DNA of 64,000 nucleotides from Octopus bimaculoides (Eukaryota). Both the position numbers and the translations under genes were made by a program. Positions 8,803 through 64,000 of the stretch are shown here, one piece after another; positions within the stretch are counted from its first letter, which is position 1, and each line of letters begins with the position of its first letter. Under the pieces are notes generated by a model. It saw only the letters and a program-made list of their open reading frames with translations, was not told where the DNA came from and did not search any database. The stretch is taken from the NCBI RefSeq assembly GCF_001194135.2, contig NC_068984.1, forward strand, positions 114,585,986 through 114,649,985, read 5' to 3'.

Positions 8803-9193
8803 TCTGTTTACTTGTTTCAGTCATTTGACTGCGGCCATGCTGGAGCACCACCTATAGTCAAGCAAATCGACCTCAGGACTTATTCTTTGGAAGCCTAGTA
8901 CTTATTCTATTGGTCTTTTTTGCCTAACCGCTAAGTTACGGGAACGTAAACACACCACCATCAGTTGTCAAGCGATGTTGGGGGGGACAAACACAGACAC
9001 ACACACACACACACAAACACATATATATACGATAGGCTTCTTTCAGTTTCCGTCTACCAAATCCACTCACAAGGCTTTGGTCGGCCCGAGGTTATAGTAG
9101 AAGACACTTGCCCAAGGTGCCATGCAGTGGGAATGAACCCGGAACCATGTGGTTGGTAAGCAAGCTACTTAACCACACAGCCACTCCTGCGCC
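8803..9193 (-). mobile_element. Young full-length SINE family A
   Basis: Minus strand begins ggcgcaggagtggctgtgtggtt (A box), B-box-like ggttcattccc, internal (TG)n, tail …ggtgctccagcatggccgcagtcaaatgactgaaacaagtaaa. Confidence 0.92.
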
Positions 9194-10794
9194 GATTTAT
9201 TCAAGTATGAAGTGGAAAAAATTTAATATAAAAGATCACAGTCAAAATTAGGGATTAGCATTATAATCAGTGTAATAAAAATAATAAAAAAAGACTAACA
9301 TTAAACCTATGGAAATGAAGAAACTGAGAGCAGTAGCCCCCGAGACCATCTAACAACTTATACACTTCACTGCCTGCAATTATTTATTAAACACTGCATA
9401 CATAGCAAACACATCCAATGGCAACGGTTCACTGTAATCAGAAACATTATTGATAGTGTGATCATACATACTGTTGTTGAAAAGGGATTATTTATAGGAT
9501 TACAATTTAAAACATGGAAGTTACATTACTGATGTATGCTAATTGTAAAAAGGAAAAGAAAAAAACAGAGACAATAAAAAAACCTTTGGCCTTTATATAA
9601 CAAAAAAAGTATGGTTGTAGAAAAGAGATATAATGCTACAGTGCAAAATTTAAACTTAGAATTTCGTCGAAATTTAAACTTAATCCTTTGTCTGTCAAAA
9701 GCATTATCATAATTTTATCTGAAACATCCAATGCTTAGTCAGCCCTTGTTTTATACATTCAGAGTAACATAAAGTATAGTTACTCTGGTGGTTGAAAAAA
9801 ACTGGGTATGTGTGTCATGCATGATGCACAGATGCCAGGGAAATATGTCTTGTGTGTCACATGTGATACACAGAACAGGCAAAGTTTAATGTCATGAAAG
9901 ATATGATGATAAACTGTATTACCAATTTTTTAGCTACAAAAATTGGTCATATACTGGAGATCACATAGAAATTGAGTAAATATGATACTAAATACTCTGC
10001 CTTGTAAATAACTACAGCTGTAACAATAATCTCTGTTTAATAATAGCTTAATATAAATGCCAGTTAGTTCATCAGTTGATTTTTCTCCAATTATGCTTTA
10101 CACCATACAGATTTGAGAGAGAGAGAGAGAGATAGAGAGAGAGAGAAAGAGAGAGAAAAAAAAGTACAGTTAATATAAGAGGTGCAGGTGAATGCACATA
10201 TAAGGCTTGGTGACAGGCAATGAGTAAAAGAATGCTGCAGGCACACACAGAGCATCATAGAGGAGGCGGTGTTAAATGATAGGATAATTAGCTGTAGCTG
10301 AAAAAAGCTCTGCAGTAGTTAGTATTCATTGTAATGAATATTTTTCTTTGATGCTTTTCAGGTTAGATGCGCATCAATAAAGGATTTTTTCTTTCTTTTT
10401 TCTTTTTAGCATTAATCACTAGGGTATTTGCTAACTTGAGAATTTATAACAACCTGTTCCAAATGAATATATCACTACAATTACTACAATATATATTTTG
10501 GCCACCGTGGGTAATATGAAATATTGCATACATTATAATTAATTAAATTACCCAATGTAGTAAACGTATACTTCCAAAGTTACCTGTTGTATGACATAGG
10601 TAACATTCTAGTTATATAAAAAAAAATTACATCAATGGGTTTTCAATTTTTGCCTAATCTTTTTCCATTAAAAACTAGATGCAATATTCTTCCAATTGCA
10701 TGTTTATAACATATACAACCAAGTCATAAAAAGAGCAAATTCATGGTAAATTTCATTAACTGGATTAAGATTTGATGGATTGCCAGTTATTGTA

Positions 10795-12130
10795 CAGCGT
10801 AGGGCAGAGAGGACAGACATTTTTGAAATGGCTATTACTCAGCCCCAGGGGGAAGGGCATATGTCTGACAGGTACCATTTGGTCTGTGGTGTCTTAGCAT
10901 TTTTTTTCTTTTCAGGTGAAGCCATGACACTGTGGACGATAGAGCAACCTCTTTTTATGCCTACGACAGGTACGTGAAGAATAACGAGTCTGTCACAGCA
11001 GTTCAGCCTGAGTTTCAGTGCCACTTCAACATTCACCGAAATCAGGCTGTTCCCACCCCATAACACAATCTTATGTTGGATGAATGCACTTTGTGCACGA
11101 GGTACACTAATGAATACGAGATCGGTGATGGTGCCACAAACAATACGGACACTGGAAAATGTGGAACACATCAGACAAGCTTTGATACAGAGTCCTGAAT
11201 CACTCTGCTCAGAGGCATTCCATTGAACTTGGCATCAGTAATCAATTAGTAAAGCATATTTGGCATGAGGGCCTGCATTTCCATCAATACAAATGGGCAA
11301 CAGTTGACACCATGGGACTATACACAGCAGCTTAACTTCGCACATCAAACGGAAGCAATTTTTGAGGCAAATGACAACCTCATTTTGTTAATGAATGAAT
11401 GATGAAGCTCATTTTCATCTCAATGGCATGGCGAATCAACAGAACTGTCATTATTGGGCTTTTGAAAATCCGAGAGAACTGCCCGAAAGACCACTGCACA
11501 GTCCAAAAGTGACGATCTGGTGTGCTGTTGGAAAAGCTGCCGTCATTGGGCCTTACTTTTTTGAAGACAGTAATGGAAATGCTGTTTCTGTGAACTCCGA
11601 GAATTACATCAAGATGATAAACAACTTCTTTGTGCTTGAATTACAACAAAAACATGCTTATTCCACATGTGTGGCTTCAGCAGGATGGGGTGACAGTCCA
11701 CACAGCAAGAGCATCAATGGATGTTCTTCACCCTCTCTTCAGTGACCGCCTCATTTCCAGGTTTGCTGACATCCCCCCACCCTCAAGTCCTTGATTTGTC
11801 CATGTGTGATTATTTCTTGTGGGAAAATCTCAAGGCACGTGTGTATGTACATAAGCCTCACACATTGGACAATTTGAAGGAAGCTATACATGTGGAAGTC
11901 GCCCAAATCGACAGAGCAATGCTGGAGAGAGTGGAGGCCAACATCCAAGAACACCTTCAGAAATGCATCAATGAAACCGGAGACTACATGATGGATGCTG
12001 TTTTCCTCACTTGATTTTTGACAAATGCTAATCTGATATGAACACATTGATGCTAATTCAATATGAACACTGCCAAAATTAATGATTTTATGAATTTTTC
12101 AAAAACGTCTGTCCTCTCTGCCCCACTCTG
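10795..12130 (+). mobile_element. Full-length Tc1/mariner-superfamily transposon, DD41D (rosa/Visitor)-like
   Basis: About 33-bp imperfect TIRs (cagcgtagggcagagaggacagacatttttgaaa vs reverse complement cagagtggggcagagaggacagacgtttttgaaa), TA on both sides (10793-10794, 12131-12132), 1336 bp. Confidence 0.92.
10924..12014 (+). pseudogene. Frameshifted transposase (N-terminal HTH plus DDD domain)
   Basis: Motifs across frames: YVKNNESVTAVQ, DEAHFHLNG…QNCHYW, IGPYFFED, QQDG, SP[frameshift]DLSMCDYFLW. About 40-41 residues between the 2nd and 3rd Asp after repairing indels. Confidence 0.85.
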
Positions 12131-14889: not shown

Positions 14890-16093
14890 ATGTACCATCA
14901 ACTTCTGGAACATCATTAGTGAAGTGTGTGGTCAAGCATTGTCCTGAAGAATGATTGGCCCTCTTCTGTTGATCAGTCTGGGATGGAGGAGTACCAGTTT
15001 TTCATTCATTTTGGCAATTTCATGGCAATATGTTTCTGCAGTAATGGTTTTTCCAGGTTTTAAGAAGTCATAGTGGATGAGTCCAGCAGTACACCACCAA
15101 ACAGTCACTATAACCTTCTTTTTGAAGAGCTTAGGTTTAGGGAGGGTTTTCAGTGCTTCATTTTGGTCCAAGCTTTGTGAAGAACACTTTTTATTATTGT
15201 ACAGAATCCAGTTTTCATTGCAAGTTGCAATACGGTCAAGAAATGGATTGGTCTGGTTACATTACAGAGAAGAAGCAACGAGCAAATTTCATATCTGCAC
15301 ATTTTCTGATTTTCATTCAAATCATGTGGTACCCATTTGTCATGCTTTTTTGATTTTCCAATCACATGCAAATGGTTGCAGGCAGTTTTCTGGCTAACTT
15401 GAAATTCTTTTGCCAGTTCTCAAGTGGTTTTATGTGGATCTTTCTCCATGATGGTCTTTAATTGACCATCATCGAGGATAGATGAGCATCCACTATGCTC
15501 ACAATATTCAAGGCTCAGGTCTCCACTCACTACAAAATTGTTTAACCTTTTCAGCCCGGCTGGTACATATTTGCAGTCAAAAATTTTATAACCCAAATCT
15601 TTAAAATTCCCATTGTATGTGATGTAGTATAGTACCGCTCCAGTTTTTCTGGTAAGTATGTAGTGCCAAGATGTATGATTGAAGTGCATGACACTATAAT
15701 GACAGCTCAAAAGGTTCGCATGCATACAAACCTTGTGCCATTTCCGACTTGAGAAAAAATTCCAGGGTTAAACCATTTTCAAGCTGACCACTCACTGGTC
15801 ATTTCCTCACAAACGTTTAGTTGATATCGCAAGCAGTTTCAGCTGCTTTACATCCTTTTTTTGAAGTTGAATAGCAAAACTGCTTGAATATCGCACTTTG
15901 ACAGTTCCATTTCAGATGATTGTAACAACGGTGAAAAAAAATATCAATGTTAATTTATTGATGCATTTGAGCAAGTCTATGTCTGTATTATCAGACAATT
16001 GCAAAACATGTTTAAAAAAAATTCAAAACTCTGCAAAAATCTGGTACAAATTCTTCATGGTTCAAAATGTTGCTTATTTTTTACCCAACCTGA
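14890..16093 (-). mobile_element. Mariner transposon, 3'-truncated, transposase pseudogene
   Basis: TA+tcaggttgggtaaaaaataagcaac TIR at 16093; MELSKCDIQAVLLFNFKKG…KWF…GDLSLE…WVPHDL…TVWW…IILQDNA across stops and frameshifts. Confidence 0.92.
15546..15767. mobile_element. 222-bp TTAA-flanked insertion nested in mariner 2
   Basis: TTAA at 15542-15545 and 15768-15771; removing it restores K-W-F-K-Q-F-C-S…G-D-L-S-L-E. Confidence 0.85.
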
Positions 16094-17589: not shown

Positions 17590-17855
17590 TTTTTTTAAAG
17601 CCTTGTACTTATTCTATGGATCTTTTCTGCCAAACTGCTAAGTTATGAGGACATAATCTCATCAACACCAGTTGTCTAGCAGTGGTGAGGGACACACACA
17701 TGACAGGCTTCTTTCAGTTTCCATCCACCAAATCTACTCACAAAGCTTTGGTCAGCCTGAGACTATAGTAGAAGACACTTGCTCAAAGTGTTATACAGTG
17801 GGACTGAACCCAAAACCATGTGATTGAGAAGCAAGCTTCTTACCACACAGCCACC
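17590..17855 (-). mobile_element. SINE family A, degraded
   Basis: Colinear with 8803-9193. Confidence 0.8.
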
Positions 17856-17859
17856 TCCT

Positions 17860-19591: not shown

Positions 19592-20062
19592 ACAAATAAT
19601 AACAACAGACGAGGACAGGTGGTGTAAATAACAAAAGGATGTATTAGTATGACGCTCGGGAATACGGAAAGTCTTTGACGTTTCGAGCTACGCTCTTCAA
19701 CAGAAAGAATACGGAGACAAGGAGAAAAACACGGAGAAAAAAAATTGAATAGTGTTCAGTCAACGGTCAATCATAATAATGATATATGAGCATATGGATG
19801 TATACATACATATATGTACATACCCACATCTACATGTATATATATAGATGCATATCCGGGTACAGGACGTCAAAAAACGTGGACAAAAAAGGAATGGGAA
19901 CATAAACAAAGCACAAAAAAACCGGACTTTTTTTACGGACAACAGAATGAACACATAGGAAAACAGACAATCCACTTATGGAACTTTTCCTTCATCAGCT
20001 GCCTCTATTCTAAACTAGGCATTTCAAAGATGATATATCATAGGGTAGCATGTCATAGACAA
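19592..20062 (-). mobile_element. Penelope-like element terminal-repeat remnant
   Basis: CpG-rich young repeat containing a minimal hammerhead motif; left part homologous to about 32420-32530. PLE assignment is inferred from the ribozyme architecture; no RT or GIY-YIG seen. Confidence 0.55.
19672..19708 (-). ncRNA. Minimal type-I hammerhead ribozyme motif (U6 variant)
   Basis: Minus strand: UCUUU-CUGUUGA-A-GAGC(GUA)GCUC-GAAAC-GUC-AAAGA. 5-bp stem I, 4-bp stem II, palindromic ACGU stem III, GUC site. Confidence 0.7.
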
Positions 20063-20290
20063 TAGATGAAGGTTCCACAGTTTCTTCTAGCAACTTGTAC
20101 AGGTGATTTGTTTATAGTGACCATATGTTTGTACTCTATGTACATTAGCTCACTCCCTCCACCAAATCAACATTGCCCGTGCAGGTGTACAGTGAGCCAC
20201 ACATCAGATGTTGAAGTGATCACAGAGCAATGCAAGATTTACTCAAGTGTCATCCAGCCCAAGAATCGAAACTGTAATCTTACACAATTA

Positions 20291-21128: not shown

Positions 21129-22059
21129 ATAGATATATGTGTTTTGGTCCTATTGTTCTTAAATTCAGTTGGAGTTCATGTGAAAAACTATGTCAAAATC
21201 TGTTTTCATCAATTAGTAACCATTACAGGAGAGTTCAGTTCAATGTAACGTAATACACAAAAAAAACGACATGAAATATTCATGTTTTACAAAACTAATA
21301 CAATTAAACAGATATGATATATAATAGGTTTTCTCTACACCTACACTGAGGTAAAATAAACCAATAAACTAGCCAATACGAAAGCCAATGGTAACATACC
21401 AAATCACCATCTGCAACCAATTTTAATGATGTGGACTACCATGGAAAATATACACTAATTGTACAATTTTTTTTCCTTCTTTAAAATGCTGAGAAGACAC
21501 CTGCTGCTTTTATCAACTGAAAGTACCAACTGATCCCTCCTCCTCTAGAAGTAGCAAAAAGAGAGAACTGCATACCAAATAATTCAATGAATAATGATGT
21601 CACAGTTCAACATCCTGCTTAAGCAAGAAAGAACACTCGCCCATTACATGGTACACTGATTATTAAAGAAACATGGCTGGTTTTGGTAGATGGAAACTGA
21701 AAGAAGCCCAGTGTGTATGTGTGTGTGAACTATAAAGCGAAGTCGAACTCAAATGTACCACAGTCCAATGAAGGCTAGCATGCCAAAATTTCAAAGCTAC
21801 TATCAACACTGTTCTTGTAAAAGGATAATAAATATGTACTCTATAAAAAGTATTGAGCAATCCTTCAGTTTAATGTAAAATTGTTTATTATACTTGATAT
21901 AAAAACAAATATATGCATTTATGTATGTACATATATAAGTGTGCATGGGTGTGTGCGTGTGTGTGTGTGTATGTCAAGTATCTCCTCAACACGATAGGGT
22001 AAACCAGTGTCAGTGTCATACACGCAATATCCTTGGCTTACAATCTTCCATGAAAATAT

Positions 22060-22269
22060 ACTCTTTTATTCTTTTATTTGTTTCAGTCATTTGACTGCGG
22101 CCATGCTGGAGCACCGCCTTTAGTCAAGCAAATCGACCCTAGAACTTATTCTTTGTAAGCCTAGTACTTATTCTATCAGTCTCTTTTGCCAAACCGCTAA
22201 GTTACGGGGACGTAAATACACCAGCATCGGTTGTCAAGCGATGTTGGGGGGACAAACACAGACACACAA

Positions 22270-22304
<35 letters not shown>

Positions 22305-22475
22305 CATATATACAACGGGCTTCTTTCAGTTTCCGTCTACCAAATCCACTCACAAGGCTTTGGTCGGCCTGAGGTTATAGTAGAAGACACTTGCCCAAGG
22401 TGCCACGCAGTGGGACTGAACCCAGAACCATGTGGTTGGTAAGCAAGCTACTTACCACACAGCCACTCCTGCGCC
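22060..22475 (-). mobile_element. Young full-length SINE family A nested in an older family-B tail
   Basis: Near-identical to 8803-9193 and 27105-27506; flanks rejoin as ttccatgaaaatat/gtcaagc. Confidence 0.9.
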
Positions 22476-23304
22476 TAATATGTCAAGCTATTTGAAATAT
22501 CATCTTACATAGAAACAAGTGAGTGTTAGCAACAGGAAAAGCATCTAGCTGTAAAAAAATCTCTACTTCAACAAATTCTCTCCTGCCCATGCAAGTAATG
22601 GAAAGTGGACATTAAAACATTCTCCACCACTACCACTAAAAATTAAGATATTAAGATATTGTGAAATTAGCAAAAGTTCCAAGGAGTTACCACATAAAAT
22701 GATATTATTTAAACACAAGAAGGCAGGTTGAAGATTATCCTGCGAGATAATTTTGCCCATCACTCATTGAAAATATGCCATGGTAGTCATAATGCCAAAT
22801 GAAAGTCTTGCATACTGATACAATTGTTCCAAGGCTTGAAAAGAAATATATGGATGGACTTTAAATTACCAGTGGTAGCTAATAATAGACAGGTTTCGTA
22901 TTGACCTTGCTAAGATATAAATGCTACAATATAGTATATATTAACTTCTCAATGACAGACACTGGAGAAAGAATTGAGAATAGTATAAAGATTAATAGTG
23001 ACTGACAAATCAATGACAAAGCACTGCTTGTGACTTTTCACTTTTTGTTACTACAATAACTCTCCATAAGTTACATAGTTCTACAATGCCCTCTCTTTTA
23101 TTAGATATTTTATTTTATGTCTAATAAATTTTCTATCATCTGTAGAATACCTTCAAGTATAGCAATATATTTTATGTCTGGGATTAAATTAATGAAGGCT
23201 ATAAGAAGTGGAATCATCAAACAAACAAAATCTGACAACACAAGAAGGACTTCAGGGCCATTAACCCTTTCGTTACCATACTTTTTGAAATTCACTATCT
23301 TTAT

Positions 23305-25755: not shown

Positions 25756-25888
25756 CAGTGATTCTCAACCTTTTTACCCTTGCGTAACCCTTAAAATAAA
25801 TTACATGTCTCAAGGAACTCCTGCACAAAAAAAAATTATATTCCATATCTTTCTCATTTTTTTCTTCATAGTTCACACAGTAAATATC

Positions 25889-25931
<43 letters not shown>

Positions 25932-26191
25932 NNNNNNNNNNNNNNNNNNNNNNNNNNNNNNNNNNNNNNNNNNNNNNNNNNNNNNNNNNNNNNNNNNNNN
26001 NNNNNNNNNNNNNNNNNNNNNNNNNNNNNNNNNNNNNNNNNNNNNNNNNNNNNNNNNNNNNTGATTCTCAACCTTTTTACCCTTGCGTAACCCTTAAAAT
26101 AAATTACATGTCTCAAGGAACTCCTGCACAAAAAAAAATTATATTCCATATCTTTCTCATTTTTTTCTTCATAGTTCACACAGTAAATATC

Positions 26192-26236
<45 letters not shown>

Positions 26237-26466: not shown

Positions 26467-27104
26467 GTTTATAATGTCATCCTGGGGGAGGGGGTTATTA
26501 TGTTATTTGCACAACTGAATAAAACTTTCTTATTCACACTTGTGACATATTAAAAGAATGTAAAATCAGGATATTTCCCCACATTCCTGTTGTTTCTCTC
26601 TGAAAACCACTGAAGCAAATCTTTCTTCCTTTTTCCAAGTTTCATGTCAGACACAGAACAACTATAGTGTGAGTCAATGACTAACCCTACTAGAAATAGC
26701 AAATATCTCTCAAGTCTAACATCTGTTGTTTAAAAAAAAAAAAAAAGAGGACACATTGGACCATGTAGTCCTAAGTATACTACCTTAGAAAAGGCAAAAA
26801 TAGGATGGCCACAACAGGAATGCAATGGAAGATAAGTTCTGTTTTATCAAAACTGACATGGGAGCTAAACCAACCACCACCACTAAATATAGTGAGAAGA
26901 CAGGAGTTATCAAATTTATGGAACTTTACAAATCAAAATTGAAAGGAAAATGCTTGTCAATGAAATTTAACTATATAGTAGCTTAACTAATACATATATA
27001 TTATGGAGTAAAATATGATAGCAAATATATAACACCTTAACTCTTTTGACACCAACCTGCCTAGGAACACTTCAGGTTCTGTTATTAAAAAAAAGTTGTT
27101 TTAA

Positions 27105-27506
27105 AATACTCTTTTACTCTGTTACTTGTTTCAGTCATTTGACTGCGGCCATGCTGGAGCACCGCCTTTAGTGGAGCAAATCGACCCCAGGACTTATTCT
27201 TTGGAAGCCTAGTCCTTATTGTATCGGTCACTTTTTGCCAAACCGCTAAGTTACGGGGACGTAAATACACCAGCATCGGTTGGTTGTCAAGCAATGGTGG
27301 GGGGACAAACACACACACACACACATATATATATACATATATACGACGGGCTTCTTTCAGTTTCTGTCTACAAAATCCACTGACAAAACTTTGGTCGGTA
27401 CGAGGCTATAGTAGAAGACACTTGCCCAAGGTGCCACACAGTGGGACTGAACCCGGAACCATGTGGTTGGTAAGCAAGCTACTTACCACACAGCCACTCC
27501 TGCGCC
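27105..27506 (-). mobile_element. Young full-length SINE family A
   Basis: As for 8803-9193. Confidence 0.92.
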
Positions 27507-27874
27507 TGTTCATATCTCAATAAAATCCATCAGTTATAATTTTTGTTATTAGTTATATTTCGTACATCAACTTAGTACTTTTATTACCATATATCTGTTG
27601 AGATACTCTTTTTCTGTTTTAATTAATTTCAAAAACAATTAAGAATTTAGTGAAATAACTTTGTTATTATTGTTAAGCTGATGTTTCAAATATAACATGA
27701 AATTTTGAAAGTAGTTTTTAATTTAGATCAATTTAAAATAGGAAATTTATATTATAGAACCTGGGGTAATTTTGAGCAGGTTGCTAACAAAAGGATTAAC
27801 AATGAAAAATCCCTCAAAATTATCTATTTCTTAAATTAATTAAAATACACAAGCTGCGTATTTATTAGGTGTCA

Positions 27875-29732: not shown

Positions 29733-29772
<40 letters not shown>

Positions 29773-31577
29773 TACAGAATAGGTTTCTTTCAGTTTCCAT
29801 CTACTAAATTCACTTAGAAGGTTTTGGTTGGCCTGAGGCTATAGTAGATGACATTTGCCCAAGGTGGCATACAGTGGGACTAAACCTAGAATTATGTGGT
29901 TGGAACACACAGTGATGCTTGTGCCTAAAGCAAAGTCGACCTTGGCAGTATTTGAACTCAGAATGTAAAGATGGACAAAATGCCGCTAAGCATTTTGCCC
30001 ACCATGCTAATGCTTCTGCGGAGCCCTGCATTGAAAAGTTAATCAAAACAACCCCAGTATTTTTTAAGTACTTATTCTGGTATTTATTCCAACATTCTCT
30101 TTTTGCCAAAACTGCTAAGTTGTAAATACACAAACACAACAAACCAATCTGTCAAGCAGTCAGTAACAAATACACATAACAGGTTTATGGGTACTTTCTG
30201 TCTACCAAATTCACAAGGCATTGGTCTGCCCGGAGCTGAAGTAGCAGACACTAAAGGTGCCGCACAGTGGGACTGAACCCAAAACCAAGTGATGGCAAAG
30301 CAAACCTCTTAACCACACAGCCATCGATGTGCCTTTTTTTTCTGAGTGCATCATCATCACTGTTTTTACATCTGCATTTTTCATGCAGGTATGGGTTAGA
30401 TGAAATATCTTGAGGCAATATTCTGTGACCATTGGGCAACCTGAAGCAGTAGTAGGAGACACTCATGCAAGCTGCCATGCAAAAGGATTGAAACCGAAAT
30501 CACATGGTTGTGAAGTAAATTTCTTGACCACACAACTATGCCTATATCTGACCTATTCAAACAGCATCATCAAACATGCTTACATTATTATAATACAAAA
30601 TATCATTTTTCATTTTTAAGAGAAACAATTATCTAAATTTATATTGCAGTCATATTCATTTTGCAAATTAGCTGAAATACTTCTATGGGAAGCTATTTAA
30701 TATTCTAAATGTAAGCCCTTAAAAGATTTACACAGCACGGTGCCATAATTTATCAGTCAGTTTGCCAAAATTAACCAGTCATCTGATGAAAGAGAGAGAT
30801 GAATAGTAATCAATATTTTTAAAAAGCAATTAACCAAAGTCTTTAAAAAAAAAGAAGACTTACTAAAGGAAGATATCAAAAATTAGTGATCAAAAATAGA
30901 TGAACAACAAAATTCAAAAATGAATTCAAATTTGTAGCTTCAGTTTCAGTCTGTTTCAAGTGATACCAGAAAAATCACAATTCTTTCTAAATGAAAAAAT
31001 TCAGTACCATTTGATTTGGCAGTTATACCAACTCCACTGCAAATCTGTCGTCATATAACTATAATGCTTCTCTTTGTTTTTAACAAGATGCTATTCACAA
31101 GTAACCTTTTCATAATTATGTTTCTAAGTCCTCAACCAAGTCTTTTAACTATTCCTATCAAGTTAACACAATACCAGCTTCCTTGCATTCAGATTTTACT
31201 CCAAATACACATTGTCATACATACAGCAATGCTGCCTGTTGGTTTGAAAAAGAAATGAACAAACATATTCATTCTTGAAAAGAGAATAATTTTATTCAAA
31301 AGGTGCAGATGTGGCTGTGTGGTGAGAAGTTTATTTCCCAACTACATGGCTCTGGATACAGTCCCACAGCGTGGCACATTGGGCAAATATCTTCTACTAA
31401 AGCTCTAAACCAAACAAAGGCTTGTTAGTGGACTTGGAAGATGGAAACTGAAAGAAGCCTGTTGTATGCGTGTGTGTGTATGTATGTATGTATGTATGTA
31501 TATATATACACACACACACACACGCAAGCGCGCGCGCGCGCGCGTGCGTGCGTGCGTGCGTGCGTGTNNNNNNNNNN

Positions 31578-49293: not shown

Positions 49294-49522
49294 NNNNNNN
49301 NNNNNNNNNNNNNNNNNNNNNNNNNNNNNNNNNNNNNNNNNNNNNNNNNNNNNNNNNNNNNNNNNNNNNNNNNNNNNNNNNNNNNNNNNNNNNNNNNNNN
49401 NNNNNNNNNNNNNNNNNNNNNNNNNNNNNNNNNNNNNNNNNNNNNNNNNNNNNNNNNNNNNNNNNNNNNNNNNNNNNNNNNNNNNNNNNNNNNNNNNNNN
49501 NNNNNNNNNNNNNNNNNNNNNN

Positions 49523-49561
<39 letters not shown>

Positions 49562-51360
49562 GTATATATATATATATGAAGGAGAGAGACGAGTGTGTAT
49601 CCATGCATATTGCTAAACATGTAAAATGAGAAAGAAACATTCATTCACATGTTTACATGCCAAGATAAATAACTATTGGAGACTAGAAGTTGTTTATACA
49701 ATACAGACAATGCATACATAGGTATATGCACATATCTATGCACACACGCACCGAATCACATAGCGATGCACCGACACCAGAAGATGCATATCACACACAC
49801 CTAGTACAGTGTGTGAGAGAGAGAGAGATCGTGCACACAATAATTTCCGTATGGTATTCTTAATAATACAACAATGCATGAGGCGAGCAGGCTGGTTGAT
49901 TGGCTGGCTGGCTGCAACATGTCAATCGTACGGGAAAAGTACAGTGTTGTGTGATGCATACGAGACAGATATGAATGGGAGTCGGAGACGAGATGGCAAC
50001 AATCATGTGTGTCCATTGTTAGAGCGTAAACTATGAAGAGCAAAAAAACGGAAATCTTCACCCAACGTCCATTTTTTTTTGTTTTGATTTGTTTACAAGA
50101 GTAACATACATTTCCTCGCCACAATTTAACTGGAACAGATCTTAAACATGTCGACGTGCAGCAGCCCTAACCAGCAATTATAATACTAAAGCAATATATA
50201 TATACTACTTTAATACTATACAATTCTAAGCTGCAAAGGAACTCACTAAGAAAAATACGAGAAAGAACCTTATAAAAATAAAGATGAGATAAAGAAAATC
50301 TACAGTACATATCTTTCTCAAGCTAACGTTTTTCTTTTTTTTTATATATATAAAAGGTTATTCCCAATATATATGTATGTGTGTGTGTGTGTGTATGTAC
50401 ACATATCTACACACACACACAACAACAAACTATAAATAAACTAACAAAATCAGGCGACCAACTTGTAGTAAGGTGCTTGTTATAATTATAGGCATACGTA
50501 TGTGTGTGTGTGTGTGTATGTATATATATANNNNNNNNNNNNNNNNNNNNNNNNNNNNNNNNNNNNNNNNNNNNNNNNNNNNNNNNNNNNNNNNNNNNNN
50601 NNNNNNNNNNNNNNNNNNNNNNNNNNNNNNNNNNNNNNNNNNNNNNNNNNNNNNNNNNNNNNNNNNNNNNNNNNNNNNNNNNNNNNNNNNNNNNNNNNNN
50701 NNNNNNNNNNNNNNNNNNNNNNNNNNNNNNNNNNNNNNNNNNNNNNNNNNNNNNNNNNNNNNNNNNNNNNNNNNNNNNNNNNNNNNNNNNNNNNNNNNNN
50801 NNNNNNNNNNNNNNNNNNNNNNNNNNNNNNNNNNNNNNNNNNNNNNNNNNNNNNNNNNNNNNNNNNNNNNNNNNNNNNNNNNNNNNNNNNNNNNNNNNNN
50901 NNNNNNNNNNNNNNNNNNNNNNNNNNNNNNNNNNNNNNNNNNNNNNNNNNNNNNNNNNNNNNNNNNNNNNNNNNNNNNNNNNNNNNNNNNNNNNNNNNNN
51001 NNNNNNNNNNNNNNNNNNNNNNNNNNNNNNNNNNNNNNNNNNNNNNNNNNNNNNNNNNNNNNNNNNNNNNNNNNNNNNNNNNNNNNNNNNNNNNNNNNNN
51101 NNNNNNNNNNNNNNNNNNNNNNNNNNNNNNNNNNNNNNNNNNNNNNNNNNNNNNNNNNNNNNNNNNNNNNNNNNNNNNNNNNNNNNNNNNNNNNNNNNNN
51201 NNNNNNNNNNNNNNNNNNNNNNNNNNNNNNNNNNNNNNNNNNNNNNNNNNNNNNNNNNNNNNNNNNNNNNNNNNNNNNNNNNNNNNNNNNNNNNNNNNNN
51301 NNNNNNNNNNNNNNNNNNNNNNNNNNNNNNNNNNNNNNNNNNNNNNNNNNNNNNNNNNNN

Positions 51361-51861: not shown

Positions 51862-52798
51862 NNNNNNNNNNNNNNNNNNNNNNNNNNNNNNNNNNNNNNN
51901 NNNNNNNNNNNNNNNNNNNNNNNNNNNNNNNNNNNNNNNNNNNNNNNNNNNNNNNNNNNNNNNNNNNNNNNNNNNNNNNNNNNNNNNNNNNNNNNNNNNN
52001 NNNNNNNNNNNNNNNNNNNNNNNNNNNNNNNNNNNNNNNNNNNNNNNNNNNNNNNNNNNNNNNNNNNNNNNNNNNNNNNNNNNNNNNNNNNNNNNNNNNN
52101 NNNNNNNNNNNNNNNNNNNNNNNNNNNNNNNNNNNNNNNNNNNNNNNNNNNNNNNNNNNNNNNNNNNNNNNNNNNNNNNNNNNNNNNNNNNNNNNNNNNN
52201 NNNNNNNNNNNNNNNNNNNNNNNNNNNNNNNNNNNNNNNNNNNNNNNNNNNNNNNNNNNNNNNNNNNNNNNNNNNNNNNNNNNNNNNNNNNNNNNNNNNN
52301 NNNNNNNNNNNNNNNNNNNNNNNNNNNNNNNNNNNNNNNNNNNNNNNNNNNNNNNNNNNNNNNNNNNNNNNNNNNNNNNNNNNNNNNNNNNNNNNNNNNN
52401 NNNNNNNNNNNNNNNNNNNNNNNNNNNNNNNNNNNNNNNNNNNNNNNNNNNNNNNNNNNNNNNNNNNNNNNNNNNNNNNNNNNNNNNNNNNNNNNNNNNN
52501 NNNNNNNNNNNNNNNNNNNNNNNNNNNNNNNNNNNNNNNNNNNNNNNNNNNNNNNNNNNNNNNNNNNNNNNNNNNNNNNNNNNNNNNNNNNNNNNNNNNN
52601 NNNNNNNNNNNNNNNNNNNNNNNNNNNNNNNNNNNNNNNNNNNNNNNNNNNNNNNNNNNNNNNNNNNNNNNNNNNNNNNNNNNNNNNNNNNNNNNNNNNN
52701 NNNNNNNNNNNNNNNNNNNNNNNNNNNNNNNNNNNNNNNNNNNNNNNNNNNNNNNNNNNNNNNNNNNNNNNNNNNNNNNNNNNNNNNNNNNNNNNNNN

Positions 52799-54872: not shown

Positions 54873-56115
54873 CAAAGGGGGTACTCAAAAGTAAACAGAA
54901 ACATTTTCTGTGCCTCAAACAGCTTACATGGACATTGCCATGAGCAAAACACAAGTTTACAAGTAGTTTTCATGCTTTAGGAATGGTCACTTGTTGCTTG
55001 AAGCCCAACCTCATTCTGGGCGACCGTTGACCTCCCAAATGAATGTACATATCACGAAAATTCATGAACTGATCTTGGAGGATCGTCACCAAACAAACGA
55101 CAAACTTTTTGATATGAAGCTCCTACCAACGAATTTTGAGCAAGGAATTGTGAATGAAAAGAGTTGCAGCAAAATTTGTGCATTGCTTGCTCACGGAAGA
55201 TCAAAAGCAGTCACGACTGTATGCATGTCATGAACTGAAAGAACAGTTGGAAGTTGATCTGGACCTCTTTTGGAAGCTCATCACTGGTAATGAAAGCTTC
55301 TGCTATGGCTAAAACCCAAAAACAAAGCAGCATTCAAGTCAATGGAAGCATTCGATGTCACCATACCCCAAAAAAAGCACATCAGGTGAAGTCCAATGTC
55401 AAGACAATGCTGATTTGTTTTATTGATGCAAAAGGAATTTTCTACACACAATTTGTTCCTCCTGGTCAAACTGTTACTTGGCAGTTCCGAAGCATTTGTG
55501 AGACGCAATAAAATGAAAATGCCCCGACCTGTGACAGAATGGAGAGTGGTGGTTTCATCACAACAATGAACACCACCTTGAGTGTGAGACAGTTTTGACC
55601 AAACATGGCATGACCCTGCTTATCCACCCTCCCTATTCATCCAAACTTGCTGCCTGTGACTTTTTTTTTTGTTCTCCTGAATAACAAAATGTCCTTAACC
55701 CTTTTGATACCAACCCGGCTGAAACCGGCTCTGGCTCTGAGTAAAAATGACTTATCTTCATAAATTTTGAATTAAAACCGTCCATCAAACCTTAGTCACA
55801 ATTTATGTTCCTAACACCAGCTGAATGATAACTAAGTTATTTTACTAAATTCTTTGTTATATTTAAAGTGATTGAAATATAGAGCATGTCAAAATAAATA
55901 CAGTAACGAAAGGGTTAAAGGAAAACATTTTGCAGATGAGGAAGAGGCATCACTTTGCAAGATTTCAAGGACTGCTTTGAACAATGGAAAACGTGTCTGA
56001 ACCGATGCAATGCTTCAAATAGAGAATACTTTGAAGGCAGTAAAAGTAAATACATGTAAAACTAAGTGAAGAAAATAACATTGCAAAATTCCAGTTTCTT
56101 TTGGGTACGCCGTTG
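54873..56115 (+). mobile_element. Mariner transposon, internally deleted pseudogene with both TIRs
   Basis: TA|caaagggggtactcaaaagtaaac…gtttcttttgggtacgccgttg|TA; PKKAHQVKSNVKTMLICFIDAKG…FVPPGQTV, HHNN, HPPYSSKLAACDFF, LKGKHFAD. Confidence 0.9.
55699..55914. mobile_element. piggyBac-like MITE family B nested in the mariner at 54873-56115
   Basis: TTAA|cccttttgatac…gtaacgaaaggg|TTAA; excision restores ctt aaa gga aaa cat ttt gca gat (LKGKHFAD). Confidence 0.92.
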
Positions 56116-56457
56116 TACATACATAATGATTCTGGAATCTGTTTCATCATGATAAACAAGTTTCCTCAAATACCACATACTGGTCATTTCATATGCATTC
56201 ATATACATACATACACACATGCACATTCACAACCAAATATATATAGATATGCTCATCAACATATGTATAAATACATATGTACACACATATACACAACATA
56301 CCTACATATATACATACAGGTATGACATATTCATACATACAAATACACATACATGCACACAAATGGGTGGGGGGGAAGATACACAGAGCAGAAGCATGCT
56401 TATTGTTATCCCCATTTTTAATAGCATGTCAATTTTAGAGAATTCTTGATTTTTGAG

Positions 56458-57180
56458 ACTATCTCCTCTCCTCGAAGGCGGTCCCAATTGTAATGACACA
56501 ATTGGCTTGCTCGTTCTGGAAGTGAGAATAATTTCAATAAATCAACAAGACATGTTACTGGCCACACTTAGCTCATTCTCATTTCATTTACAAATACACA
56601 CACACACACACACACACGCACACATATATATATAAAAGCCATTGTCTTCTGTTGTCTTGGGCAAATCAAAGCCTTGTGAGTGGATATGGTAGATAAACCA
56701 AAACAAGCTTGTCATGAGTGTGAATGTGTGTCTCCTTGTCTCAACATTCCTCAAAAGTTATAAATGAAAATCACTATAACAAAAGTTGTGCTGTTGGTTT
56801 CCAATTTTCTGTGAAAACATGCATGCATGGGCATTATTTTAATAAACGTAACTTTGAATTAATTCAATGTTGTTGGCTGTTCATTGTAGGTTGATGTTGA
56901 CTGTTCTTGTTCTGTTATCATTGGCCTGATGTGTAGCCTGTGGTGTACACCTCATTTGGATATTTACCACTTGCAAGGTTCTGCTTGCTATGAAACATAT
57001 GTAGACCAGGTTACAAGGCCTGCTCTTGATCTGCAGCAGGTAACATTGATGTGATGGAGGGAAGGAATTAATGTAGAGCACAAACATTTGATCACAATAA
57101 ACAAATCATTTGTGCAGGTTGTTCAACAAGAAACTGCAGAGCTGTCTTTCTTGGACTATGAGAACCTACCACCACCATAA
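56458..57180 (+). CDS. Candidate three terminal exons of an unidentified plus-strand gene (56458-56521, 56890-57039, 57118-57180)
   Basis: Donors AA|gtgaga and CAG|gtaaca; acceptors ttttgag (atypical), cattgtag, ttgtgcag; phases 2/0, 0/0, 0/stop give LSPLLEGGPNCNDTIGLLVLE-VDVDCSCSVIIGLMCSLWCTPHLDIYHLQGSACYETYVDQVTRPALDLQQ-VVQQETAELSFLDYENLPPP*. No homolog recognised. Confidence 0.25.
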
Positions 57181-57886
57181 TATTTATGTGTGTACATACA
57201 TTCGTGACTGTGTGGTTAAGAAGTTTGCTTCCCAACTATGTGGCTTAGGCAAGTATCCTCTACTATAGCCCCAAGTCAACCAAAACCTTATGAGTGGATT
57301 CAGTAGATGGAAACTGAAAGAAGCCTGTCACATGTGTTTGTGTGTCCATGGATCAAACAGAGTTTATTGACACAGATTTGCTACGATTCATCTTGCCTAC
57401 CATCACTGGTTTCCTGATGTTGTATATGGTTTAACAGAAGACTGAAAATGAGAGATACCATTTGTATGATGATAATGTTCATTAATAACTATGATGTGAT
57501 ATCAAGACAAGGTGACACGTGTGTGTGTGGTGTATATATATGTACATATATATACACACACATGCATATATACACACACATATACTCACACACATGCATA
57601 TATACACACAAACATATACACACACACACACACATACACACAAACATATACACACACACATACACACAAACATATNNNNNNNNNNNNNNNNNNNNNNNNN
57701 NNNNNNNNNNNNNNNNNNNNNNNNNNNNNNNNNNNNNNNNNNNNNNNNNNNNNNNNNNNNNNNNNNNNNNNNNNNNNNNNNNNNNNNNNNNNNNNNNNNN
57801 NNNNNNNNNNNNNNNNNNNNNNNNNNNNNNNNNNNNNNNNNNNNNNNNNNNNNNNNNNNNNNNNNNNNNNNNNNNNNNNNNNNNNA

Positions 57887-57929
<43 letters not shown>

Positions 57930-57931
<2 letters not shown>

Positions 57932-58185
57932 AGAGTTAAGGAATAGAGAAGGTAAAATCTGGTCTACATATGTTTCATAGCAAGCAGAACCTTGCAAGTG
58001 GTAAATATCCAAATGAGGTGTACACCACAGGCTACACATCAGGCCAAGGGTATCTTGATTGAATGAAAGTTTACATTGTCACAAGGAGGTACTTGTTAAC
58101 ACATGGAAGAATCGAACTTCTGAGGTTCTGCTTGCTATGAAACATATGTAGCCTGGATCTTATCTTCTCCATTTCTTAACTCTTA
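57930..58185. mobile_element. MITE-like fold-back with about 64-bp imperfect terminal inverted repeats
   Basis: 57930-57992 is the reverse complement of 58122-58185 with about 9 mismatches; no clear TSD. Confidence 0.65.
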
Positions 58186-58691
58186 TATTTTTATGCGCAT
58201 ACCCGGCAACCCTGGTCACCTACTGTGAAATATAAAAAGAACTCTTTTCAGTTTATCGTACTTCAAAACGAAAAAATCCACAACCTTCCATCTCAATGAA
58301 CCACTATCCCTGAAAATTGTTTTTTATATTTACTACTCATTGCTTGAAGCTTTCTTCCTACACCTTGATCCATACACACACCTATATAATTACATATACA
58401 TACATTTATACATAGACATCATCCTCCTTTAATATCCAATTTTGATGCTGGCATGTGTTGGACGGTTTGACCAAAGCTAGCAAGCCAGAGAGCTGCATTG
58501 GGTCCCATTTTGATTTGATTTAGTTTCTACAGCGGGATGCCCTTCATAACACCAACCACTTTACAGTATGTGCTGGGTAGTTTTAACGTGGCACTGACAC
58601 AAGTGTTTTTATATGGCACCAGCACAGGACTCTTACAGGAAAATCCTCTTCACCAGGGGATGTGGCTTTAACACTTCTGTAGTGGAGGTAC

Positions 58692-59216
58692 CAACTTGTT
58701 CAGCTTCTTCACCTTGCTGAATTGTTTTAGATGGTCCAATACAATTGGAAACGAAAACTCAAACTTTGCTGTTAACCCATGCATAGTTTGAGATGTATCC
58801 ACTTTCACTACAGTTTCCAGCTCATCATTATCCACCTTGGTTTCAAGTCTACCACAGGGCTAATTTTCAAGAGTAAAGTCACCAGACCAGAACTTCTCAA
58901 ACCATTGACATACAGTGCGCTCATTCGCTACATCTTCACCAAGCACCTCATTGATGTTTCAAGCTGTCTGGGATGCATTGGTTCCACAATGGAATTCATA
59001 TTCATAAACAACACAAATTTTTTTATCTATCCATAGGTTAACAAAAATTGATTTACAAGCAAAAACTCACAATATAATCAGACACCATGAATAGCATTTC
59101 GAAAGTGATGTAATTCTTCAATGTTGTAAAACAAAGAATTGTCAGGATAAAACATTAGAGTTAACAACTGTCAAACTTGGTGCATAAGAAAATCAGACAT
59201 TTCATTCTTAATGATT

Positions 59217-59219: not shown

Positions 59220-59295
<76 letters not shown>

Positions 59296-59785
59296 CATGT
59301 ATATATGTATGTATGTATATATACACACACACACACACATACTCTTGTGTGTATTTAGTGTACACTTGTCTCGACACTATTTGGTGGTTGCAAACAAGCA
59401 TCATCATACAGGTATGGTTATTCATTCCCAGTCTTCTGTGAAAAATACATCTGGCCATGGAGAAATATCATCTTGCTTGGAAACAGGTTGACTTCTGGTA
59501 GAAAATGTACAGACATCCAAGAAGACATGTGACAAACTAGTGAAGAAGGACATCAGGATGCTGAGTCTAACAAATGAAACAGAAAAGACTGAAATGATTG
59601 CTGATTTGCTGTGCTTGAGAAGATCCATTCATCAAAGCAAAATTAAAGCCCTAAAAATATATTATGTCTATGCTCTTTCATTCATGGTTCTGGGTTCAGT
59701 CCTATTGCATGGCACAGATACAAGTGAGCGAGTCTAACCACAGAAAATCTGCCACATCAAATTATCAGCAGACATTAGATAGTAG

Positions 59786-61309: not shown

Positions 61310-61700
61310 TTACTTGTATCAGTCATTAGACTGTGGTAATGATGGGACACCAATTTGAAGAATTTTAGTCAAATGAATCAATCTCAGTACTTCTTTTTTA
61401 AGCTTGCTACTTATTCTGTCAATTTCCTTCTGCCAAAGTACTAGGTTATAAAGATGTAAACACACCAACACCAGTAGTCAAGCACTGGTGGGGGATAAAC
61501 ACAGACACAAATACACATACATATATTATATTTTATATCATATTATATTATATATATGGGTTTCTTTTAGTTTCTGTCTCCCAAATCCATTCGCAAAGCT
61601 TTGGTCAACCTGAGGTCATAGAAGATATTTGCCCAAGGGGTCATGCAATGGGACTAAACCCAGAACCACGTGGTTGTGAAGCAAATTTCTTACCACACAG
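61310..61700 (-). mobile_element. SINE family A, head-to-head with the family-B copy at 61702-62075
   Basis: Tail and head modules recognisable though degraded. Confidence 0.8.
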
Positions 61701-62719
61701 GAATGGATGTATGGTTAAAAAGCTTGCTTTCCAACCATGTGGATTTTGGCTCAGTCTTGTTGTGCAGTACCTTGGGCAAGTGTCTTCTATTATAGCCTCC
61801 AAGGCTTTTTATGAGTGGATTTGGTAGACAGAAACTGAAAGAAGGCTGCCATGTATGTATGAGTGTATTTGTGTCTCCTTGTCTTGACATTGCATAATAG
61901 TTACAAAAGAGTAACTATCTTACAGAGTGTCACTCATTTCCAAAAATCATGTCTGGCTATGAGGGAACATTACTTTGCTTGGATACAGGTGATAGTGTCT
62001 AACCACAGAACATCTGCCATACCAAATTTCATTTGATGCATGCATGCATGGAAAAGTGGACATTAAAACCATAATGTATGTCATTGCAATCATGTAACTG
62101 ACTGCATAATAAGATAACAAAACAATGAAGAATTAACAGAAAGCTGTTGAAGGGAAGGCTTGTTCTTAGTTTAAGATCTATTACTTAACCACCAACAATA
62201 AAAGCTTTCGAGATTTTAACTCTCCATTCCCATGAATAAGTTGTAAAATATGGAGTTGGATACACTGGAGTATATATTTTTATTGTTCAAAGATATTAAA
62301 TTTGAGATTTCACTTGTGAAATGCTTCTACTGCAGTTCAAGGTGGTTTAACACAATACTCTCTTCTGAAACACTGCACAATGTTTTCTTGTCTTCAAAAA
62401 TTGTACATATATTTTGTAATGTGTAACCACTGTTTTGTTGATCTGATTATACATGTCACTGCATTGGCAAATTGACTTATTTTAAATATATTGACCGGAG
62501 ACTGCTTGGTGATTCATTCTCCGATCCAATTGGACATTGACTAAAAGAGCATGTTCCTTGTGTAGTGTTCTGGTTAAATGACCGGTCATTGTCTTGGTGG
62601 AATAACAAGGCACACCTTGTTATTCCAATTAGTAGATTAGATGTCATTACATAACTTTGTCAGTTTTTCATGTTCCCTTTAGTGATGAAGGCTGATGTAA
62701 ACCCTATAATTTGCTATCT

Positions 62720-63440: not shown

Positions 63441-64000
63441 AAACCAGCAACAAAACTTCCAGTTATTTTGTTAATATAATTTCTTTTGCTTCTTTATTAT
63501 GCTGTCAGTCAGATATATTCAATGACTAAGTATACATATAAATAATTATGTATGTGAGTATACTGATGTAAGCAGGTATGTGAGAGAGTATACATATATT
63601 AATATACATCTATATGCATGTACATTAATATATGTGTGCATGTTTGTGTGTGTGTATACACACACACACATACCAAACTGGTACTGGCATGGTTCTGTAT
63701 TTAAGAAGTTTACTTTGCAATGCCATGGCTTCAAGTTCAGTCCTAATAACATATGCCACTTTGGGTGAGAATCTTCTATCAATCCAGATGAGCAAAGCCT
63801 TGTGAATGAATTTGGTGAGAATCGAAAAGGGCGTTTTGTGTGTGTGTGTGTGTGTTCTTGCTTTGACATTCCAAGTTAATTGTAAACAAATATCAATGCC
63901 ATACAAGTGAGCACTTTGCTTGTTATCTCCTTTGAAACCACATCTTGGGGGAAAATATTACCTTATTTGAAAACTGGTAAATGTTGGCATCAGGAAAAGC

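What the first reader, a model, noticed from the sequence alone, without database searches (positions are those of the whole stretch)
56921..58047. Perfect 89-bp inverted duplicate linking a candidate coding exon to a downstream fold-back element
Seen: 56921-57009 is the exact reverse complement of 57959-58047 (89 of 89), although neighbouring repeats are heavily decayed. It carries the left-arm-specific variant (ctggtctac) of the 57930-58185 fold-back rather than the right-arm variant, so it relates to this very copy. The upstream copy lies wholly inside a 150-nt open, splice-flanked segment (56890-57039). Inference: a recent local template switch or gene conversion, capture of exon sequence by a MITE, or exonisation of a MITE. 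In a read-through transcript it would make a perfect duplex between exon and 3' region, a ready-made ADAR editing-complementary sequence or endo-siRNA source, and the fold-back's right arm would compete for part of it.
Basis: partly seen in the sequence, partly recalled or inferred. Interest (0 to 1): 0.7.

Follow-up and report, generated by a model that had tools for sequence, protein, structure and literature searches.

The report
Perfect 89-bp inverted copy between repeats
The 89-base perfect inverted duplicate is really in the sequence, but it sits in decayed repeats and not in a demonstrable exon, and it is most likely a recent local copying event (or an assembly error) of a kind reported as common in the octopus genome, so it is ordinary.

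Summary
Observation confirmed: 56921-57009 is the exact reverse complement of 57959-58047 (89/89). Identity stops abruptly at both ends. The upstream copy carries the left-arm variant of the 57930-58185 fold-back.

- The 150-nt open segment has no protein homologue and no Pfam match.
- Sixteen segments in the window are equally open and splice-flanked.
- The candidate exon 1, intron and exon 2 lie inside a decayed copy of a repeat ("X"). A second X copy at about 20.04-20.27 kb keeps neither the splice sites nor the frame.

Both flanks of the 89-mer are adjacent parts of that one X copy, so the 89-mer is an insertion into a repeat. The downstream copy is native to the fold-back, because its arm homology with the right arm runs across the 89-mer boundary.

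Best reading: a recent, local, templated copy from the fold-back into the nearby repeat, in non-coding DNA. An assembly artefact remains possible (about 0.2). The only other 100% repeat over 50 bp in the window is a gap-flanking artefact, and the downstream copy lies 73 bp from a microsatellite gap.

The RNA duplex would be very stable if both copies are co-transcribed. Published data suggest about one such near-perfect local inverted repeat per 64 kb in Octopus bimaculoides. Low interest.

The parts
56921..57009 (+). Upstream copy (U) of the 89-mer. The first ~35 nt ('head') resemble repeat X. The last 54 nt are the inner part of the fold-back arm.
   Evidence: Exact reverse complement of 57959-58047. 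Head matches X at z 3.4. Arm part is not X-like.
57959..58047 (-). Downstream copy (L) of the 89-mer: the inner 41 nt of the fold-back's left arm plus 48 nt of its loop.
   Evidence: Homology of the left arm with the right arm continues outward across 57959 (57930-57958 versus 58157-58185, about 83%), so this copy is native to the fold-back.
57930..58185 (.). Fold-back (MITE-like) element of 256 bp: arms 57930-57999 and 58116-58185, loop 58000-58115.
   Evidence: Arms about 83% complementary, with a 28-nt perfect core GGTTCTGCTTGCTATGAAACATATGTAG. Predicted hairpin energy -115 kcal/mol. No other family copy in the window.
57676..57885 (.). Assembly gap (210 N) between the two copies.
   Evidence: Flanked by a CA/TA compound microsatellite (57520-57675) and by ACAC(TA)n (57886-57927). 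The flanks are not redundant.
56880..57171 (+). Decayed copy of repeat 'X', into which the 89-mer is inserted. 57017-57171 is secure; 56880-56920 is suggestive.
   Evidence: blastn 75% over 110 nt, E 3e-14. nhmmer E 1.8e-15. Left flank is collinear with X, z 3.3, 9 of 2000 shuffles. Edited-site scores.
20043..20271 (-). Second copy of repeat X, in inverted orientation, lacking the fold-back arm sequence.
56890..57039 (+). Not supported as coding.
   Evidence: Open frame. No homologue. One of 16 such segments in the window. The acceptor motif aligns with X sequence.
57118..57183 (+). It lies wholly inside the secure part of the X copy.
   Evidence: The other X copy has AA in place of the acceptor AG and a 2-nt indel.
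57200..57345 (+). Decayed copy of the window's commonest short repeat, immediately downstream of the X copy. A further fragment lies at 56640-56740.
   Evidence: 78-83% matches to 29760-29863, 31379-31479 and 17692-17782. D7.

Best explanation
A recent, local, templated copying event in repeat-rich, probably non-coding DNA. About 1 kb apart lie an old 256-bp fold-back element (57930-58185) and, in the opposite orientation, a decayed copy of another repeat, X (56880-57171). During repair of a break or a replication template switch inside the X copy, a DNA end used the nearby fold-back as template. It copied 89 nt (part of the loop plus the inner left arm) and was then rejoined to the X copy a few bases from where it left. 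The result is an 89-bp insertion that is an exact inverted duplicate of the fold-back's left side.

Shown: the exact identity; the abrupt ends; that the left arm is native to the fold-back; that both flanks of the upstream copy belong to one X copy.

Inferred: the direction of copying (fold-back to X copy); the repair or template-switch mechanism; the idea that a weak resemblance between the first 35 nt of the 89-mer and the X sequence at the insertion point guided the choice of template.

The upstream segment is not a demonstrable exon. Its open frame and 'splice sites' are features of repeat-derived sequence. If both copies lie in one transcript they would form a perfect 89-bp duplex, an ordinary hyper-editing-type substrate and not an exon-specific editing device.
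For: - Identity is 89/89, against 93% or less for all other true repeats in the window, so this event is younger than those repeats.
- The flanks of the two copies are unrelated. This is an isolated tract, not two old paralogues.
- Arm homology with the right arm runs across the 57959 boundary at the same ~83% inside and outside the 89-mer, so the downstream copy is native.
- U's right flank 57017-57171 matches X at E 1.8e-15. U's left flank 56880-56920 matches the collinear, adjacent X positions (z 3.3). Removing the insert restores a continuous alignment at 52.6-58.2 bits, against 51.8 for the full sequence.
- No other copy of the arm core or loop part lies in the 64 kb, so chance adjacency of two members of a dispersed family is unlikely.
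- Templated inverted insertions at breaks and short-range template switches are documented mutation classes (PMC11724301 and PMC7954356, listed).
- No coding evidence.
Against: - Nothing at read level: the assembly is a gapped short-read scaffold, and the only other perfect repeat over 50 bp in the window is an artefact at a gap.
- The downstream copy is 73 bp from a gap edge.
- The documented yeast templated inverted insertions are mostly 5-34 bp (PMC11724301 abstract), shorter than 89 bp.
- Junction microhomology is weak (3/5 and 2/3 matches).
- The head of the 89-mer resembles X better (about 83%) than U's own downstream X segment does (about 63%), so the head could be native to U and the direction of copying is not settled.
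- The X homology of the left flank and head rests on z scores of 3.3-3.4 and a single comparison copy.
- Genome-wide copy number is unknown.
Confidence: 0.55

Rival explanations
1. Assembly artefact. The upstream (or downstream) 89-mer was put there by gap closing, local re-assembly or scaffolding of a short-read assembly, so the genome holds only one copy at this locus; or the two contigs on either side of the gap are not really neighbours or not in this orientation.
For: The window has 8 N gaps. The only other 100%-identical repeat over 50 bp (25759-25921 = 26062-26224) abuts a 130-N gap and is plainly redundant contig ends. So both perfect repeats in the window lie near gaps. The downstream copy starts 73 bp from the gap edge, and the gap sits in a microsatellite the assembler could not cross.
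Against: The repeat is inverted and not at contig ends, unlike the clear artefact. The downstream copy is embedded in a coherent arm homology with the right arm. The upstream copy is 666 bp from the gap, and its two flanks are adjacent parts of one X copy, so the two junctions belong to one locus and are not a chimeric join of two loci. Graph assemblers need junction k-mers present in reads.
Confidence: 0.2
2. Two independent members of a young, abundant dispersed family. The fold-back is a recent insertion whose arms are intrinsically imperfect. The upstream 89-mer is a truncated fragment of another recent copy that happens to lie 1 kb away in the opposite orientation.
For: Arm mismatch need not measure age if the family consensus has imperfect terminal repeats. 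Recently active MITE and TIR families are reported in Octopus vulgaris (PMC13282606).
Against: No other copy, even diverged, lies in the remaining 64 kb. A family abundant enough to make 1-kb adjacency likely should show further copies. The 89-mer lacks both element termini and ends inside the arm and inside the loop, which is not how cut-and-paste elements insert. No match in the metagenome, prokaryote or viral collections, which is uninformative.
Confidence: 0.08
3. 56890-57039 is a real (possibly exonised) coding exon. The inverted copy downstream acts in the pre-mRNA as an editing-complementary sequence for ADAR, or as an endo-siRNA source, with the right arm of the fold-back competing.
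For: The frame is open, in frame with 57118-57183, and has plausible AG/GT signals. The predicted U:L duplex is -174.9 kcal/mol against -91.8 for the fold-back arms, and all 89 nt pair with the downstream copy in a read-through model. Octopus has exceptionally high hyper-editing, which correlates with local inverted repeats (PMC5625713).
Against: No homologue in the 5.8-billion-protein word-indexed search or in the exhaustive HMMER scan of 1.84 billion representatives; the 4 weak hits are tandem-repeat proteins with summed partial matches. No Pfam family. The whole exon-intron-exon unit lies in a repeat copy whose paralogue has GC for the donor GT, AA for the acceptor AG and a 2-nt indel. Sixteen equally good splice-flanked open segments exist in the window, several of them in repeats. 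Three of six frames are open across the 89-mer. Hyper-editing is reported as extremely rare in coding sequence (section heading in PMC5625713).
Confidence: 0.05
4. Ectopic gene conversion in the opposite direction, or between two old paralogues. The head of the 89-mer is native to the upstream X copy and was copied into the fold-back's loop, or both loci are old X derivatives homogenised over 89 bp.
For: The head CTGATGTGTAGCCTGTGGTGTACACCTCA matches X at the collinear position (z 3.4). Keeping the head gives the best X alignment, 58.2 bits. The fold-back interior shares a TTCGATTCTT motif with X at similar spacing.
Against: The fold-back interior outside the 89-mer is not significantly X-like (z 0.2). 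The arm part of the 89-mer is not X-like, but it is homologous to the right arm. Flanks of the two copies are unalignable, which does not fit classical homology-dependent conversion.
Confidence: 0.1

Closest known systems
Nearby reverse-oriented repeat pairs that form long dsRNA and are hyper-edited by ADAR (Porath et al. 2017, PMC5625713)
   Same: A highly similar reverse-oriented sequence within 2 kb. It meets that paper's own criterion (over 95% identity, at least 40 bp). The predicted duplex is very stable. Octopus bimaculoides is singled out there as exceptionally rich in such loci: 4.4e-3 of random 50-bp sites.
   Different: Transcription and editing at this locus are untested. The two arms here are not two copies of one transposon but a fragment copied from a fold-back. 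The species of the window could not be verified.
Templated inverted insertions and short-range template switches at breaks or forks (PMC11724301; PMC7954356)
   Same: An exact inverted copy of nearby sequence is inserted at a second site with abrupt ends and little junction homology. The donor contains a hairpin-forming element.
   Different: 89 nt copied over about 1 kb is longer and more distant than the 5-34-bp events described in yeast. The mechanism here is inferred from the end product only.
MITE / fold-back transposable element
   Same: The 256-bp element has ~70-bp terminal inverted repeats and no coding capacity.
   Different: No identifiable target-site duplication and no second family member in 64 kb. 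The upstream 89-mer lacks both termini, so it is not a transposed copy.
Redundant contig ends at assembly gaps
   Same: Perfect identity in an otherwise decayed landscape, close to a gap. A clear case lies in the same window at 25759-25921 / 26062-26224.
   Different: That case is direct and abuts the gap. This one is inverted, lies inside the contigs, and fits the local repeat homologies on both sides.

Membership tests
MITE / fold-back element (57930-58185) | Terminal inverted repeats | tested here: met
   Arms 57930-57999 / 58116-58185 are about 83% complementary.
MITE / fold-back element (57930-58185) | Small size and no coding capacity | tested here: met
   256 bp. The only translations are short open stretches with no Pfam hit.
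MITE / fold-back element (57930-58185) | Target-site duplication flanking the termini | tested here: inconclusive
   The left end abuts a TA/CA microsatellite. No matching flanking bases could be identified.
MITE / fold-back element (57930-58185) | Multi-copy family in the genome | tested here: not met
   Within the 64-kb window there is no other copy apart from the 89-mer. The genome-wide count cannot be tested with these tools; collection scans were empty.
Protein-coding exon (56890-57039) | Open reading frame with splice-site consensus | tested here: inconclusive
   Present but not discriminating. The window has 380 stop-free stretches of 150 nt or more, 236 of them AG..GT-flanked and 16 passing the stricter filter.
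Protein-coding exon (56890-57039) | Protein homologues or a domain match | tested here: not met
   No hit. The exhaustive HMMER scan gave only 4 spurious repeat-protein hits.
Protein-coding exon (56890-57039) | Frame and splice signals conserved in related sequence | tested here: not met
   The paralogous X copy has GC for the donor GT, AA for the acceptor AG and a 2-nt indel.
Protein-coding exon (56890-57039) | Transcript evidence | not testable with these tools
ADAR substrate formed by local inverted repeats | Reverse-oriented, near-identical sequence within about 2 kb | tested here: met
   89/89 at about 949 nt, a distance that includes an estimated gap. Criterion taken from PMC5625713.
ADAR substrate formed by local inverted repeats | Both arms in one transcript, with clustered A-to-G changes | not testable with these tools
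   No expression data. Only the thermodynamic prediction is available.
Templated insertion / template switch | Identical donor nearby, and recipient flanks unrelated to donor flanks | tested here: met
Templated insertion / template switch | Empty site in a related sequence | tested here: inconclusive
   Only a paralogous copy of X is available. It lacks the arm part, and the alignment closes when the insert is removed. The orthologous empty site cannot be tested.
Templated insertion / template switch | Microhomology at the junctions | tested here: inconclusive
   3/5 and 2/3 matching bases just outside the 89-mer.
Assembly artefact | Redundant, collinear contig ends at a gap | tested here: not met
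   The flanks of 57676-57885 are not redundant, unlike those of 25932-26061.
Assembly artefact | No read support for the junctions | not testable with these tools
   No reads are available.

The most novel reading that the evidence does not exclude
The duplicate is real, only a few per cent divergence-equivalents old at most, and lies inside a transcribed unit. It would then be a datable 'newborn' perfect 89-bp dsRNA that out-competes an older hairpin (the fold-back). It could be used to watch how ADAR hyper-editing or small-RNA production starts on a brand-new substrate, possibly with the upstream arm included in a lineage-specific exonised repeat.
Probability: 0.12. Interest if true: 0.35.

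Novelty: new member of a known kind. Interest (0 to 1): 0.14.

Why it matters
As it stands it matters little. It is one more near-perfect local inverted repeat in a genome type where such repeats are reported at about 0.44% of positions. That corresponds to roughly one pair per 64 kb, which is what this window shows. If long reads confirm it, it is a clean small example of templated inverted copying from a hairpin-forming element into a neighbouring repeat. If transcribed, it is one more hyper-editing-type substrate. It also serves as a caution: open, splice-flanked segments in repeat-rich, AT-rich animal DNA are common and should not be called exons without homology or transcript evidence.

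Tried and rejected
1. Protein homology for the joined 70-aa 'exon' peptide gave nothing. A concatenate of 12 ORFs from 54.2-62.6 kb, meant to reach independent assemblies of the locus through gene calls, also gave nothing, so the look-up of encoding contigs was not usable.
2. The exhaustive HMMER scan of the 50-aa segment gave 4 hits of E 4e-7 to 4e-4. These are tandem-repeat proteins whose many weak stretches add up, so they were rejected as homologues.
3. A third protein search with transposase ORFs, meant to verify the species and whether octopus proteins are in the collection, returned unnamed Logan/ENA/JGI transposases and insect proteins. The species is therefore unverified, and the negatives say nothing about octopus gene models.
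4. Exact-pattern scans of the arm core in the metagenome (twice), prokaryote-genome and viral collections gave 0 hits. This is uninformative for an animal repeat.
5. Rfam reported only sub-threshold mir-297/mir-466-type hits on CA/TA microsatellites and nothing on the fold-back. No tRNA was found.
6. The idea that the fold-back arms and interior are themselves X-derived (TTCGATTCTT motif, AAACATATG anchor) is not significant outside the 35-nt head, so it is left as a lead only.
Only 10 selected ORFs were scanned.

Full report
**1.
- Window 56921-57009 is the exact reverse complement of 57959-58047, 89 of 89.
- The repeat finder reports the pair as 97 nt at 97% (56916-57012 / 57956-58052), and the fold-back as arms 57920-57999 / 58116-58195 at 81%.
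- The arm core GGTTCTGCTTGCTATGAAACATATGTAG occurs three times in the window (56977 +, 57964 -, 58124 +). The loop part occurs only twice. None is expected by chance.
- Identity ends abruptly. Local alignment of 200 nt of flank on either side against the corresponding fold-back flanks is no better than shuffles (z between -0.9 and 1.8).

**2. The gap (operators' request).**
- The 210-N gap at 57676-57885 has a compound CA/TA microsatellite on its left (57520-57675) and ACAC(TA)n on its right.
- Six of the window's eight gaps sit in such microsatellites.
- Its flanks are not redundant, and nothing coding crosses it. The ORFs listed through it are translations of the microsatellite.
- The simplest reading is an unassembled microsatellite. 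Continuity, distance and relative orientation of the two contigs are still scaffolding inferences that I cannot check.
- By contrast, the 130-N gap at 25932-26061 is flanked by a perfect 163-bp direct duplication (25759-25921 = 26062-26224), a plain redundancy artefact.
- In a self-comparison of the whole window, these are the only two 100%-identical repeats over 50 bp. All other pairs are 73-93% identical apart from a few matches under 55 bp.

**3. Which copy is the original?**
- The left arm of the fold-back matches the right arm over about 70 nt.
- The boundary of the 89-mer (57959) falls in the middle of that homology. Identity to the right arm is about 83% both outside (57930-57958) and inside (57959-57999) the 89-mer.
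- The downstream copy is therefore a coherent, native part of the fold-back.

**4. The upstream site is a repeat, not a demonstrable exon.**

Homology:
- The joined 70-aa peptide (56890-57039 plus 57118-57180) has no homologue in the word-indexed search and no Pfam match.
- An exhaustive HMMER scan of the 50-aa segment against 1.84 billion representatives gave four weak hits. On inspection these are tandem-repeat proteins matched in many short stretches.

Null model:
- The window holds 380 stop-free stretches of 150 nt or more. Of these, 236 are AG..GT-flanked.
- Sixteen, this one included, pass a pyrimidine-rich acceptor plus G|GTRA donor filter. Several of the 16 lie in repeat copies.
- Three of the six frames are open across the 89-mer. 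The same frame is open for longer in the downstream copy.

Repeat content:
- The right flank 57017-57171 contains the donor site, the 'intron' and all of 'exon 2'. It is homologous to 20043-20198 on the other strand (blastn 75%, E 3e-14; nhmmer E 1.8e-15). I call this repeat X.
- In the other X copy the donor GT is GC, the acceptor AG is AA, and 'exon 2' carries a 2-nt indel.
- The left flank 56880-56920 aligns with the X positions immediately upstream (z 3.3, 9 of 2000 shuffles).
- Against X, nhmmer scores 51.8 bits for the sequence as assembled. It scores 52.6-52.9 with the 89-mer (or the 89-mer plus 7 nt) removed, and 58.2 when only 56956-57035 is removed.
- The two flanks of the 89-mer are therefore adjacent parts of one X copy, and the 89-mer is an insertion into it.

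Consequences:
- A chimeric join of two loci becomes unlikely.
- The first 35 nt of the 89-mer resemble the X segment at the insertion point (CTGATGTGTAGCCTGTGGTGTACACCTCA against CTGATGTGT-GGCT-CACTGTACACCTGCA, z 3.4).
- This resemblance may be why this template was used. It also leaves the direction of copying not fully settled.
- The arm part of the 89-mer and the rest of the fold-back interior are not significantly X-like.

**5. Surroundings.** The neighbourhood is a repeat graveyard.
- Mariner-type transposase relics lie at about 54980-55800 (+). One ORF hits Pfam Transposase_1 at E 1.2e-6.
- I also read a mariner relic at about 58668-58860 (-) by eye from its translation. It had no Pfam hit, so it is unconfirmed.
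- Decayed copies of the window's commonest short repeat lie at 56640-56740 and 57200-57345.
- A further dispersed repeat lies at 58417-58628.
- Rfam gives only microsatellite noise, and there are no tRNAs.

**6. Mechanism.** Best supported is a recent local templated copy from the fold-back into the X copy, by break repair or template switching.
- Zero differences in 89 nt bound the divergence at about 3.4% (95% Poisson bound, my calculation). That is younger than every other repeat pair of comparable length in the window.
- Templated inverted insertions and short-range template switches are documented (PMC11724301, PMC7954356). The yeast events are mostly 5-34 bp, so this would be a long example.
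- Steps shown: identity, abrupt ends, native status of the left arm, insertion into one X copy.
- Steps inferred: direction of copying, enzymology, homology-guided choice of template.

**7. RNA consequences.** These follow only if both copies are co-transcribed.
- Predicted duplex energies are -174.9 kcal/mol for U:L, -91.8 for the fold-back arms and -115.1 for the fold-back alone.
- In a 1101-nt read-through model with the gap removed, all 89 upstream positions pair with the downstream copy, and the right arm is displaced.
- This is the known class of ADAR hyper-editing substrates.
- Porath et al. report that in O. bimaculoides 4.4e-3 of random 50-bp loci have a reverse-oriented match of over 95% identity and at least 40 bp within 2 kb, which they call 'exceptionally high' (PMC5625713).
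- That predicts about 280 bp per 64 kb. This window has 178 bp (2 x 89), so it sits at the background rate, provided the window is from that species. I could not verify the species.

**8. Rivals and scores.**

| Explanation | Probability |
|---|---|
| Recent local templated copy (best) | 0.55 |
| Assembly artefact | 0.2 |
| Conversion in the other direction, or between old paralogues | 0.1 |
| Two members of a young dispersed family | 0.08 |
| The exon / editing-complementary-sequence reading | 0.05 |

**9. Verdict.** The exon linkage is unsupported. This is an ordinary instance of a known kind. Interest is low, about 0.14.

Noticed in passing
window 25759-25921 and 26062-26224 (gap 25932-26061): A perfect 163-bp direct duplication brackets a 130-N gap. 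The right contig restarts about 170 bp before the point where the left contig ends. These are almost certainly redundant contig ends, so the gap is spurious or negative.
   Followed up: partly
window 20043-20271 (-) and 56880-57171 (+): A previously unflagged repeat family ('X'), about 230-290 bp and about 75% identical between its two copies. The copy at 20 kb is bounded by a (CT)n microsatellite. Its relation to known cephalopod repeats is unknown.
   Followed up: partly
window 57964-57991 and 58124-58151: The two fold-back arms share a 28-nt core without a single mismatch, although the arms overall are about 83% identical. My rough estimate for such a run is p about 0.014. This could reflect intra-hairpin conversion or constraint.
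   Followed up: no
window 54980-55800 (+), 58668-58860 (-), 11395-12014 (+), about 14900-15400: Several frameshifted mariner/Tc1-type transposase relics. One ORF hits Pfam Transposase_1, and the 11.4-kb and 15-kb ORFs have 50-84% identical transposases in public data. The 58668-58860 relic is read by eye only and had no Pfam hit.
   Followed up: partly
window 8790-9208, 22058-22491, 27103-27507, plus 2415-2630, 17591-17859, 61698-61844: The window's most abundant short interspersed repeat, about 400 bp with copies 77-93% identical. Fragments of it flank the finding at 56640-56740 and 57200-57345.
   Followed up: no
window 57515-57600, 59274-59353, 56242-56307, 63585-63680: Rfam 'evalue' hits to mir-297, mir-466, mir-3688 and similar families fall on CA/TA microsatellites, all far below their gathering scores. 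They are false positives of microsatellite-derived miRNA models.
   Followed up: yes
window gaps 49294-49522, 50531-51360, 51862-52798, 31568-31577: Most gaps are bounded on both sides by the same TA or TG microsatellite. The assembly breaks systematically at microsatellites, so gap lengths here are only estimates.
   Followed up: yes
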